Virus record (IMG/VR): IMGVR_UViG_3300023174_000038
Span: 62,001 to 126,000 of that record
DNA: 64,000 nucleotides
Reading direction: 5' to 3' (one strand)
The notes beneath the pieces are model-generated. The model saw nothing but the letters and a program-made list of their open reading frames with translations, made no database searches and was not told where the DNA came from. How positions within the stretch are numbered: position 1 is the stretch's first letter; each line of letters begins with the position of its first letter. The translations under genes were made by a program, and so were the position numbers. Below are positions 29,645 to 30,693 of this stretch, piece after piece.

Positions 29645-29881
29645 TTAGAAGTATGGTAGCCCTGATTTCTTAGTAGTTTCTAAGTTTTCTTCTATCATTT
29701 TACCGATATTATTACGTTCGGAAGTAGACATATTTAAAATATCTTCATAGCTGGCACCACCCCTCATATGCCAAGCGTATTTTATAGCTGTGTTTTTAAT
29801 AGCTTTACTCTCTGCTTCAAGATCATCTATAAGCTTCTGTATATCCTCAGAGTTAAGATATAGAAGCTTTACCCGAAAAAA
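29645..29881 (-). CDS. -1 frame extension (78 codons) of the upstream assembly gene; not in the ORF track
   Basis: The frame opens immediately after a TGA at 29882-29884 and reads FFRVKLLYLNSEDIQKLIDDLEAESKAIKNTAIKYAWHMRGGASYEDILNMSTSERNNIGKMIEENLETTKKSGLPYF*. The first in-frame ATG is at codon 39 (29767). Confidence 0.7.
   Translation of the reverse strand, partial: FFRVKLLYLNSEDIQKLIDDLEAESKAIKNTAIKYAWHMRGGASYEDILNMSTSERNNIGKMIEENLETTKKSGLPYF
29831..29881 (-). other. Programmed -1 ribosomal frameshift signal
   Basis: In-frame slippery heptamer T TTT TTC (29881-29875), 5-nt spacer GGGTA, then stem-loop AAGCTTCT-ATATCTT/AGGATAT-AC-AGAAGCTT (29869-29831). Confidence 0.75.
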
Positions 29882-30693
29882 TCAGATACGTTAAGAGTTA
29901 GTTTTTGTGTATAGTCATGTGTGCAATGGATACATTTTACATCCAATGGTTTAAGCTGTGATGATTCACGTAATTTCACTGCTGTTACTCTAAGTTGTTC
30001 AAACGTTTTACGGTCACAATTTTGTAGGAAATCCAAAATATATTCTTTTTCATTTACCATTGCAGTTGGTGTGCTGATATATTCTAAGGATTCACTAATT
30101 AATTCTATACTCAAATTGTTTAATTTTTGCATAGTAATACCAGATTCAGTTTGACGTTCGGCCGGGTCTTCAATGTTTTCTAATTTATTAATAGATTGTT
30201 CAATTTCAAATTGTATCATATTGATGTTATTAACCTTTTGATAAGTAAAGGGTTTAAACTTGAAGGTCAGTTCATTTATAATTATAGGATCATCATAATT
30301 ACCAACTTCAATTCTACTTAGTAATCCTACTAAATTTATATTATATGAAGCTTGTTCAGTACAATTTGGGCATGTTGATTCAATCTCAAGTAAATTACCA
30401 TTACTTGCGGCTCTAATTGCCACTAATATCGGGTCTAAATCTATACTAGGAATAGACCATGGATCTTTAATATTAGGAACACAGCTTTTAATAATTTCAA
30501 CTACAGCAGTTCCGTTGAATAATGCGTCTGGAGTTTTGCTTGTTATCTCATCAATTGCAGTCATTGGATATATGGGTAATTCTTTATTTTCAGGTAAATC
30601 AATAGATCCAGCTGGGTAAAAGTTACCACCACTGGGTAACTTTAGATAAATTTCAGGTCTACGGAAGTATTGTTTTAATGGATTTGTGTTCAT
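29869..30693 (-). CDS. Tail/baseplate hub assembly protein (gp26-like; probable tail assembly chaperone), 274 aa
   Basis: RRPEIYLKLPSGG...MTAIDEI...DLDPILVAIRAAS, plus two CxxC pairs (CPNC, CIHC). AGGAG SD. Divergent from the tape measure gene. Confidence 0.65.
   Translation of the reverse strand: MNTNPLKQYFRRPEIYLKLPSGGNFYPAGSIDLPENKELPIYPMTAIDEITSKTPDALFNGTAVVEIIKSCVPNIKDPWSIPSIDLDPILVAIRAASNGNLLEIESTCPNCTEQASYNINLVGLLSRIEVGNYDDPIIINELTFKFKPFTYQKVNNINMIQFEIEQSINKLENIEDPAERQTESGITMQKLNNLSIELISESLEYISTPTAMVNEKEYILDFLQNCDRKTFEQLRVTAVKLRESSQLKPLDVKCIHCTHDYTQKLTLNVSDFFG

What the first reader, a model, noticed from the sequence alone, without database searches (positions are those of the whole stretch)
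29645..30693. Unannotated -1 programmed frameshift: a lambda G/GT-style chaperone pair in a T4-like jumbo phage
The 274-aa gene ends GAT TTT TTC GGG TAA, a perfect X XXY YYZ slippery site one codon before the stop. Five nt downstream is a ~15-bp stem-loop (29869-29831). The -1 frame is closed by TGA immediately before the heptamer and then stays open for 78 protein-like codons, whose first ATG comes only at codon 39. Prediction: a major 274-aa product and a minor 349-aa fusion. This is the architecture of the tail assembly chaperone frameshift next to tape measure genes (lambda G/GT, established), but here the gene is divergent from the tape measure gene and looks like a T4 gp26-type hub assembly factor. 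I do not know of this recoding being described for this phage group. It would imply that the gp26-like protein plus its extension is a G/GT equivalent.
Basis: partly seen in the sequence, partly recalled or inferred. Interest (0 to 1): 0.8.

Follow-up and report, generated by a model that had tools for sequence, protein, structure and literature searches.

The report
Frameshift makes two tail-assembly chaperones
A giant freshwater phage makes a short and a long version of a tail-hub assembly helper from one gene by slipping back one base at a conserved TTTTTTC site, which is the single-gene equivalent of phage T4's separate genes 26 and 51; the signal is real but unannotated, and the principle was apparently published for T4-like phages in 2022.

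Summary
The 274-aa gene (30693..29869, minus strand) belongs to PF12322, the family of T4 gp26. It ends with T_TTT_TTC one codon before its stop. A 15-bp hairpin starts 5 nt later, and the -1 frame opens exactly at the heptamer for 78 codons.

Comparative data make chance or independent initiation untenable:
- The in-phase heptamer plus a 60-91-codon -1 ORF is present in 79/79 close relatives, 82/83 cyanophage loci and 11/11 distant GenBank phages.
- The -1 ORF shows a full coding signature upstream of any start codon.
- RNA structure follows the heptamer in two clades.

T4 gp51 is itself a PF12322 protein with a C-terminal tail that aligns with the extension. Other lineages carry tandem short and long paralogues whose long copy has the extension fused in frame. 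So the zero-frame product corresponds to gp26 and the transframe 349-aa product to gp51.

The lambda G/GT analogy holds functionally. No sequence or fold link to classical tail assembly chaperones was detected.

Prior art: Vladimirov, Gautam and Davidson 2022 (not readable here) reportedly describes short and long TAC genes and poly-T slip sites in T4-like phages. This is therefore a new member of a known kind. Ribosomal versus transcriptional slippage remains untested.

The parts
29869..30693 (-). Zero-frame gene for a 274-aa gp26-like hub assembly chaperone (short form). It carries two CxxC-type motifs (C108/C111 and C254/C257).
   Evidence: PF12322 T4_baseplate, E 2.1e-16, 60.7 bits against a cut-off of 24.5. 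phrog_150 'baseplate hub', E 7e-17. AlphaFold2 model: pLDDT 86.5, pTM 0.81. The cysteines are invariant in alignment A6.
30699..30703 (-). Shine-Dalgarno-like AGGAG, 5 nt upstream of the ATG of the gene
   Evidence: Read directly from the sequence.
29875..29881 (-). Slippery heptamer T_TTT_TTC in X_XXY_YYZ phase, encoding ..D-F-F in frame 0
   Evidence: TTTTTTCG is invariant in 51 distinct relatives. It is present in phase in 79/79 close relatives, 82/83 cyanophage loci and 11/11 distant phages. The preceding codon is always NNT although its amino acid varies.
29831..29869 (-). Stem-loop 5 nt downstream of the heptamer (15 pairs, 2-nt bulge, 7-nt loop); probable frameshift stimulator
   Evidence: Fold. 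On 51 sequences, 73% of cells are paired against 33-50% when partners are slid. The covariation score is 0.23 against at most 0.13, and 0 of 500 shuffles reach it. Downstream 55-nt windows have mean z -2.0, against -0.12 for control windows inside the gene.
29645..29881 (-). -1 frame extension of 78 codons including the two shared Phe codons, then TAA. It adds 76 residues, giving a 349-aa long form (the gp51 equivalent).
   Evidence: The extension is exactly 78 codons in 77 complete relatives. The coding signature before any start codon equals that of the rest of the ORF: synonymous fraction 0.36 against 0.08-0.10 in the other two frames. The same domain is fused in frame at the C-terminus of natural 319-351-aa paralogues.
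30754..33534 (+). Divergent neighbour: a 926-aa probable tape measure protein with a cell-wall peptidase domain. It is the likely client of the chaperones (context only).
   Evidence: Peptidase_M15_4 at residues 755-814, E 5.8e-12. The protein-atlas look-alikes are mostly tape measure clusters, scores 0.86-0.92, which is a lead only. The RaK2 orthologue is annotated as similar to a tape measure protein. The next gene is the portal.

Best explanation
The gene encodes the tail-hub assembly chaperone pair of a T4-related jumbo phage in a single cistron. Most ribosomes read frame 0 and terminate one codon after T_TTT_TTC, giving the 274-aa short form (the counterpart of T4 gp26). A minority, paused by the hairpin that starts 5 nt downstream, let the two tRNA-Phe re-pair one base back. 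They then read CGG in the -1 frame and add a 76-residue helical tail, giving a 349-aa long form (the counterpart of T4 gp51).

By analogy with T4 gp26/gp51 and lambda G/GT, both forms act transiently with the tape measure protein and hub during tail initiation, in a ratio fixed by the slip frequency, and are not kept in the virion.

Shown here: the signal, its deep conservation, translation of the -1 ORF from the heptamer onward, the existence of in-frame long paralogues, and the family assignment. Inferred: the ribosomal (rather than transcriptional) nature of the shift, its efficiency, and the chaperone function.
For: 1. Signal anatomy.

2. Conservation. The in-phase heptamer plus a -1 ORF occurs in 79/79 IMG/VR relatives at 42-100% identity and in 82/83 T4-like cyanophage loci. 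It also occurs in Phosso, PA5oct, Atu_ph07, Serratia BF, Salmonella 7t3, 121Q, RaK2, RsoM2USA (T9 run), megaphage LR756511, S-CAM1 and P-SSM4.

3. The wobble T before the run and the C after it are invariant, although both sites are synonymous or variable in frame 0.

4. The -1 ORF is closed just before the heptamer. The first ATG/GTG/TTG falls anywhere from codon 4 to 39, and PA5oct has no Met at all. Even so, codons 5-19 show the same coding signature as codons 20-78.

5. RNA structure follows the heptamer in the window clade and in cyanophages (mean z -2.0 and -2.2, against about 0 for internal controls). Paired synonymous changes such as G-C to A-U preserve pairing.

6. T4 gp51 hits PF12322 over residues 1-201 (E 3.9e-52) and carries a C-terminal tail that aligns with the extension (VFKLLVNPDEI / ..MIPAER..).

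7. The extension profile finds about 22 natural 319-351-aa proteins with the domain at their extreme C-terminus. In the two contexts examined, these sit in tandem after a short PF12322 paralogue that keeps a relic heptamer.

8. U_UUU_UUC fits the rules for shift-prone heptamers in E. coli (PMC4066793).

9. T4 gp26 and gp51 are both listed as hub assembly chaperones, and gp51 is absent from the particle (PMC3004832).
Against: There are no expression data: no RNA run holding the locus was listed, and there is no proteomics. RNAalifold returned no consensus structure on the 51-sequence alignment. The hairpin is weak or absent in the RaK2/121Q group, and its spacing varies in distant phages.

Both stem arms are also protein-coding, so part of their conservation is protein-driven. 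Profile-profile similarity between the extension and the T4/cyanophage gp51 tail is weak (E 0.018-0.08), although it falls at the right place.

A transcript with one extra U would give the identical protein, so the comparative data cannot separate ribosomal from polymerase slippage. [quoted passage not shown] No similarity to classical TAC folds was found.
Confidence: 0.8

Rival explanations
1. Transcriptional slippage. RNA polymerase occasionally adds one U in the T6 run, and normal translation of that minority mRNA gives the same 349-aa protein.
For: The protein product would be identical, so every conservation argument applies equally. One relative (RsoM2USA) has a T9 run, a length at which polymerase slippage is known to be efficient. 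The title of Vladimirov et al. 2022 points to a non-translational route in some T4-like phages.
Against: The run is exactly six T followed by C in more than 170 loci, never lengthened except once. From general knowledge, bacterial polymerases slip appreciably only on runs of about 8-9 or more. Structured RNA immediately 3' of the site, with compensatory changes, is the hallmark of ribosomal -1 frameshifting and has no known role in polymerase slippage. According to a citing paper, the 'other mechanism' of the 2022 paper is separate short and long genes, not slippage.
Confidence: 0.12
2. The downstream ORF is an independent small gene, as annotated in GenBank ('hypothetical protein', or 'gp51' in P-SSM4). 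It would be translated from its own start or by termination-reinitiation coupling.
For: Several relatives have an ATG overlapping or close to the upstream stop (Phosso, Atu_ph07, 121Q, many cyanophages), and annotators called it as a gene.
Against: There is no conserved start. The first possible start codon ranges from codon 4 to 39 in the window clade and is absent in PA5oct. The window itself would lose the conserved first 38 residues. The residues FFRxxLL before those starts are conserved and show a coding signature. The -1 frame always opens at the heptamer. Natural long paralogues and T4 gp51 carry the domain covalently fused to a gp26-like body.
Confidence: 0.04
3. Chance arrangement, pseudogene or homopolymer sequencing error.
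For: Homopolymer runs are error-prone in some sequencing chemistries. One cyanophage contig (L146) has the two parts in one frame.
Against: Four independent assemblies agree on T6. The arrangement recurs in more than 170 loci from cultured and uncultured phages. Only 1 of 40 ORFs in the window shows such a configuration.
Confidence: 0.01

Closest known systems
Phage T4 gp26 and gp51 (baseplate hub assembly chaperones; Pfam PF12322 T4_baseplate)
   Same: Same protein family. The window protein, T4 gp26 and T4 gp51 all hit PF12322. The short form ends in the conserved ..FF motif, as gp26 does. The long form carries a C-terminal helical tail that aligns with the gp51 tail. Both T4 proteins are listed as hub assembly chaperones.
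   Different: T4 encodes the two forms as separate, divergently transcribed genes, and its gp26 codes FF as TTC TTT, which is not slippery. Here one gene makes both forms. The bodies share only about 15-20% identity.
TAC genes of T4-like phages as described by Vladimirov, Gautam and Davidson, Virology 2022;566:9-15 (not readable here)
   Same: Citing papers say it reports two things. Some T4-like phages carry a short gene plus a longer fusion gene instead of frameshifting. Poly-T sequences are -1 signals in the TAC-N genes of T4-like phages. This matches what I derived independently.
   Different: I could not read the paper. I therefore cannot say whether it names gp26/gp51, whether it covers jumbo phages of the RaK2/PA5oct/Atu_ph07 type, the tandem-paralogue lineages or the downstream hairpin, or which mechanism it favours for the poly-T sites.
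Lambda gpG/gpGT tail assembly chaperone frameshift (Levin 1993; Xu, Hendrix and Duda 2004, 2013, 2014; summarised in PMC5009743)
   Same: A -1 slip near the 3' end of a chaperone gene gives a major short and a minor long form that share the N-terminus. The gene lies beside the tape measure gene. The products are assembly factors not kept in virions.
   Different: No detectable sequence or fold similarity. The slippery site is U_UUU_UUC rather than G_GGA_AAG. The gene is divergent from, not upstream of, the putative tape measure gene. The body is larger (274 aa) and has Cys4 zinc-ribbon-like motifs.
E. coli dnaX tau/gamma -1 frameshift
   Same: A bacterial-type heptamer plus a downstream stem-loop at a short spacer acts as the stimulator.
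   Different: dnaX shifting truncates the protein, uses A_AAA_AAG and has an upstream Shine-Dalgarno-like enhancer. No such enhancer is visible here.

Membership tests
Pfam PF12322 T4_baseplate (gp26/gp51 family) | Score above the curated gathering threshold over most of the model | tested here: met
   60.7 bits against 24.5; residues 38-273 on model positions 15-218 of 219. phrog_150, E 7e-17. BFVD fold matches are named baseplate hub assembly protein or hub subunit.
Programmed -1 ribosomal frameshift cassette | X_XXY_YYZ heptamer in the correct phase | tested here: met
   T_TTT_TTC at 29881..29875. Invariant in relatives.
Programmed -1 ribosomal frameshift cassette | -1 ORF open from the site, conserved and coding, without its own conserved start | tested here: met
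Programmed -1 ribosomal frameshift cassette | Stimulatory RNA structure 5-9 nt downstream, supported by covariation | tested here: met
   Hairpin with a 5-nt spacer. Pair counts and covariation exceed the slid and shuffled controls. z-scores against internal controls in two clades. Caveats: RNAalifold gave no consensus, and the RaK2-like group lacks a clear structure.
Programmed -1 ribosomal frameshift cassette | Transframe protein detected; shift shown to be ribosomal | not testable with these tools
   No RNA run was listed and no proteomics is available. The product is identical under polymerase slippage.
T4 gp51 equivalence of the long form | Extension homologous to the gp51 C-terminal tail | tested here: inconclusive
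   The position and the motifs agree. The cyanophage extension hits phrog_634 'hub assembly catalyst' at 2e-30, and T4 gp51 hits it at 1e-23. However, the window-clade profile against the gp51/cyanophage tails gives only E 0.018-0.08.
T4 gp51 equivalence of the long form | Natural proteins with gp26-like body and extension in one frame | tested here: met
   About 22 of the top 150 hits are 319-351 aa with the extension at the C-terminus (E down to 7e-21). All 20 that were aligned hit PF12322. Tandem short plus long paralogues occur in L093 and L094.
Classical phage tail assembly chaperones (lambda gpG-like, Pfam Phage_TAC families) | Sequence or fold similarity to a known TAC | tested here: not met
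   No Phage_TAC family appears in the Pfam scans, even at E 10. Foldseek against the PDB gives no match with E below 1. The PDB sequence search finds nothing relevant.
Classical phage tail assembly chaperones (lambda gpG-like, Pfam Phage_TAC families) | Adjacent to the tape measure gene | tested here: inconclusive
   The divergent neighbour is a 926-aa protein with tape-measure look-alikes, from a language-model lead, and an M15 peptidase domain. No tape-measure HMM hit was obtained.
Classical phage tail assembly chaperones (lambda gpG-like, Pfam Phage_TAC families) | Needed for tail assembly but absent from virions | not tested
   Literature on T4 only. In PA5oct the neighbours carry an ESI-MS/MS note and the gp26-like gene does not.

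The most novel reading that the evidence does not exclude
The gp26/gp51 chaperone pair may have switched repeatedly between three encodings: a hairpin-stimulated ribosomal -1 frameshift (jumbo phages, a megaphage, cyanophages), tandem short plus long paralogues that keep a relic slippery site, and divergent paralogues (T4). On this reading the frameshift form is ancestral for the whole T4-related radiation. If the 2022 paper did not cover the jumbo and megaphage lineages, the tandem pairs with relic heptamers or the conserved RNA stimulator, those parts would be new. They would argue that translational frameshifting is the rule and T4 the exception.
Probability: 0.3. Interest if true: 0.5.

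Novelty: new member of a known kind. Interest (0 to 1): 0.38.

Why it matters
The result explains two long-enigmatic T4 hub genes (26 and 51) as the two halves of a frameshift-type chaperone pair. It also gives a natural experiment: frameshift, tandem duplicate and divergent duplicate all produce a short and a long form. That supports the idea that the ratio of the two forms, not the recoding itself, is what tail assembly needs.

In practice, hundreds of phage genomes mis-annotate the extension. They call it a separate hypothetical gene, or 'gp51', or leave it out. Gene callers and frameshift predictors trained on lambda-type TACs miss it. For this window the finding corrects the gene model but does not reveal a new kind of system.

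Tried and rejected
- DNA-level search of the phage collection found nothing; only protein-level searches worked.
- The search for related loci with the diverse alignment A3 failed for lack of a conserved stretch.
- RNAalifold on 51 sequences gave an empty consensus. I relied on explicit pair counting and per-sequence z-scores instead.
- hhalign of the extension profile against T4 gp51 was weak. One search was circular because the window sequence was in both alignments, so I ignored it.
- NCBIfam has no model for any of these proteins.
- Neither the PDB sequence search nor the PDB Foldseek search gave a meaningful hit.
- No RNA-seq run holding the locus was listed, so transcript heterogeneity at the T run could not be examined.
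- Six literature searches for gp26/gp51 plus frameshift found nothing relevant.
- The key prior paper surfaced only in a reference list and could not be opened by DOI or PMID.
- I did not model the read-through fusion itself. A natural long paralogue was folded instead.

Full report
**Observation.** The minus-strand ORF 30693..29869 encodes 274 aa and ends GAT TTT TTC GGG TAA.
- The heptamer T_TTT_TTC (29881..29875) is in the X_XXY_YYZ phase.
- In the -1 frame a TGA lies immediately before the heptamer. From the heptamer, 78 sense codons run to the TAA at 29647..29645, and the first ATG is at codon 39.
- Five nucleotides after the heptamer a stem-loop of 15 pairs (2-nt bulge, 7-nt loop) spans 29869..29831. 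The 81-nt context folds at -19.6 kcal/mol, z = -2.9, and no shuffle of 200 folds as well.
- Of 40 ORFs of at least 100 aa in the window, only this one combines an in-phase heptamer near its end with a long -1 ORF.
- Contigs from four independent freshwater metagenome runs cross the T run without an indel.

**Identity of the gene.** The protein is a member of PF12322 T4_baseplate (E 2.1e-16) and phrog_150 'baseplate hub'. The window comes from a 348.7-kb IMG/VR contig. Its neighbours are:
- a T4 gp20-type portal;
- an SbcC/gp46-like nuclease;
- a RusA-like resolvase;
- divergently, a 926-aa protein with an M15 peptidase domain, whose language-model look-alikes are tape measure proteins.

The closest cultured relatives share about 23-32% identity. 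They are the jumbo phages Phosso, PA5oct, Atu_ph07, Serratia BF, 7t3, 121Q and RaK2. The AlphaFold2 model is confident (pLDDT 86.5) but matches nothing in the PDB.

**Conservation of the signal in distant phages.** In eleven GenBank phages the gene keeps a T-run heptamer in the same phase, followed by a -1 ORF of 65-91 codons that opens at or just before it. These range from jumbo phages and a 595-kb megaphage to the T4-like cyanophages S-CAM1 and P-SSM4. Ten have T_TTT_TTC and RsoM2USA has a T9 run.

None of the records annotates a joined CDS. The downstream ORF is called a hypothetical protein, truncated to an internal ATG, omitted, or (in P-SSM4) named gp51 'baseplate hub assembly catalyst'.

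**Conservation in metagenomic relatives.**
- Among 80 IMG/VR relatives of the window protein (42-100% identity), 79 of 79 evaluable loci have TTTTTTC in phase. Every complete extension is exactly 78 codons.
- Among 83 loci fetched with the P-SSM4 (cyanophage) and 121Q (RaK2-like) gp26 proteins, 82 have the heptamer plus a 60-73-codon -1 ORF. The exception (L146) has the two parts in one frame.
- TTTTTTCG is invariant across 51 distinct sequences. The codon before the run always ends in T although it encodes D, S, N, H, A, R, V or T.

**The extension is translated from the heptamer, not from its own start.** In the window clade the first ATG/GTG/TTG of the -1 ORF falls anywhere between codons 4 and 39, and PA5oct has no Met at all. 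Nevertheless R3, L6 and L7 are invariant.

Codons 5-19 have the same third-position-biased variation and synonymous fraction (0.36) as codons 20-78 (0.38). The other two frames give 0.05-0.10 and always contain stops.

**RNA stimulator.** I counted pairs for the hairpin across 51 sequences:

| Measure | Observed | Control |
|---|---|---|
| Cells paired | 73% | 33-50% with partners slid |
| Covariation score | 0.23 | at most 0.13 with partners slid |
| Shuffles reaching the observed values | 0 of 500 | - |

Some double changes are synonymous on both arms, for example G-C to A-U at columns 24/58.

Per-sequence folding of the 55 nt after the heptamer gives the following:

| Clade | Mean z after heptamer | Fraction below -1.5 | Mean z, control windows inside the gene |
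|---|---|---|---|
| Window clade | -2.0 | 73% | -0.12 |
| Cyanophages | -2.2 | 71% | -0.06 |

Caveats: RNAalifold found no consensus. The RaK2-like group shows no clear structure. Both arms also code for conserved residues.

**What the long form is.** T4 gp51 (249 aa) hits PF12322 over residues 1-201 (E 3.9e-52), as gp26 does (E 8.8e-64). It matches phrog_150 end to end. Its last roughly 50 residues belong to phrog_634, which the cyanophage -1 ORF also hits at 2e-30.

The gp51 tail aligns with the extensions from the junction (VFKLLVNPDEI against FFRVKLLYLNSEDI) to the ..S/Y..LNM..ER motif. Profile-profile scores for the window clade are weak (E 0.018-0.08), but they fall at the right place.

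Independent evidence comes from a profile of the window-clade extension searched against 1.84 billion proteins. It finds 442 hits. About 22 of the top 150 are 319-351-aa proteins carrying the domain at their extreme C-terminus, starting at profile position 2.
- All 20 that were aligned are PF12322 proteins.
- In the two contexts examined, the long gene follows a short PF12322 paralogue in tandem. That short copy still ends with T_TTT_TTC or T_TTT_TTA, but its -1 frame closes after 2-3 codons.
- A natural long paralogue folds confidently (pLDDT 90.2), with the extension as a four-helix C-terminal module.

Thus three encodings exist for the same pair: frameshift, tandem duplicates, and T4's divergent genes 26 and 51. 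T4 gp26 codes its FF as TTC TTT.

**Mechanism.** The most likely route is tandem -1 slippage of the two tRNA-Phe on U_UUU_UUC, stimulated by the downstream hairpin. The zero-frame stop lies one codon after the site in most lineages. The heptamer fits the E. coli rules for shift-prone motifs: a UUY A-site codon, with X and Z both pyrimidines.

Polymerase slippage would give the same protein and cannot be excluded without RNA data. The fixed T6 length and the structured 3' context argue against it.

The function is inferred. It rests on T4, where gp26 and gp51 are hub assembly chaperones and gp51 is not in the particle, and on the lambda G/GT paradigm.

**Comparison with what is known, and novelty.** The large 2016 recoding review does not mention baseplate or cyanophage cases, and my keyword searches found nothing.

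[quoted passage not shown]'. It is not held in the library. Citing papers state two things:
- some T4-like phages carry one short gene and one longer fusion gene instead of frameshifting;
- poly-T sequences are -1 signals in the TAC-N genes of T4-like phages.

That is essentially what I derived here. From memory, unverified, the genes in that paper are 26 and 51.

But it is a new, unannotated member of a kind already described. Parts that may go beyond the paper are the jumbo and megaphage lineages, the relic heptamers in tandem pairs, and the covarying hairpin.

Classical TAC membership was tested and not met at the sequence or fold level, so 'G/GT equivalent' should be read as a functional analogy.

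Noticed in passing
L146:1201-2094 (IMGVR_UViG_3300049043_000112, 236-kb contig): This is the only locus of the 83 fetched with the cyanophage and RaK2-like queries without the heptamer. Body and extension form one 297-aa in-frame ORF (junction ..TSFWLGMAHVDL..). It is either a natural hard-wired long form without a nearby short copy, or a homopolymer assembly error.
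   Followed up: partly
L093:820-1704 and L094:1959-2789: The short paralogues of tandem short plus long pairs still end with an in-phase T_TTT_TTC or T_TTT_TTA. Their -1 frame closes after 2-3 codons. These look like relics of an ancestral frameshift site.
   Followed up: partly
L008:3271-3279 (Ralstonia phage RsoM2USA): The slip site is a run of nine T instead of T6C, followed by a 91-codon open -1 frame (84 codons counted from the slip site) and a strong 11-bp hairpin 14 nt downstream. A run of this length could also support polymerase slippage.
   Followed up: no
L009:2162-3271 (uncultured megaphage LR756511, 595 kb): The gp26-like gene has an extra low-complexity N-terminal region of about 100 residues (K/Q/P/E-rich). 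It still has GGT TTT TTC and a 75-codon -1 extension. The record has no annotation at all.
   Followed up: no
window 30754-33534 (+): The 926-aa divergent neighbour combines tape-measure-like features with a Peptidase_M15_4 (VanY-type) domain at residues 755-814. It is probably a tape measure protein with a cell-wall hydrolase.
   Followed up: partly
GenBank records LT960552.1, NC_042116.1, PV654397.1 (hits H65, H66, H63): The gp26-like gene is annotated as 'Lead, cadmium, zinc and mercury transporting ATPase' in the Yersinia phages fHe-Yen9-03 and fHe-Yen9-04, and as 'portal protein' in Escherichia phage WPEC5. These are evident misannotations.
   Followed up: no
window 29545-29615 (-): Just after the stop of the extension there are two short inverted repeats (GATGAAC..GTTCATC and AAGAAC..GTTCTT), the second followed by a T run. 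This looks like the end of the transcription unit, although the terminator scan's stricter rules did not report it.
   Followed up: no
L012:7803-8090 (phage T4): T4 gene 26 also has an annotated internal-start product, 26'. T4 therefore makes yet another size variant of this chaperone by a third route.
   Followed up: no
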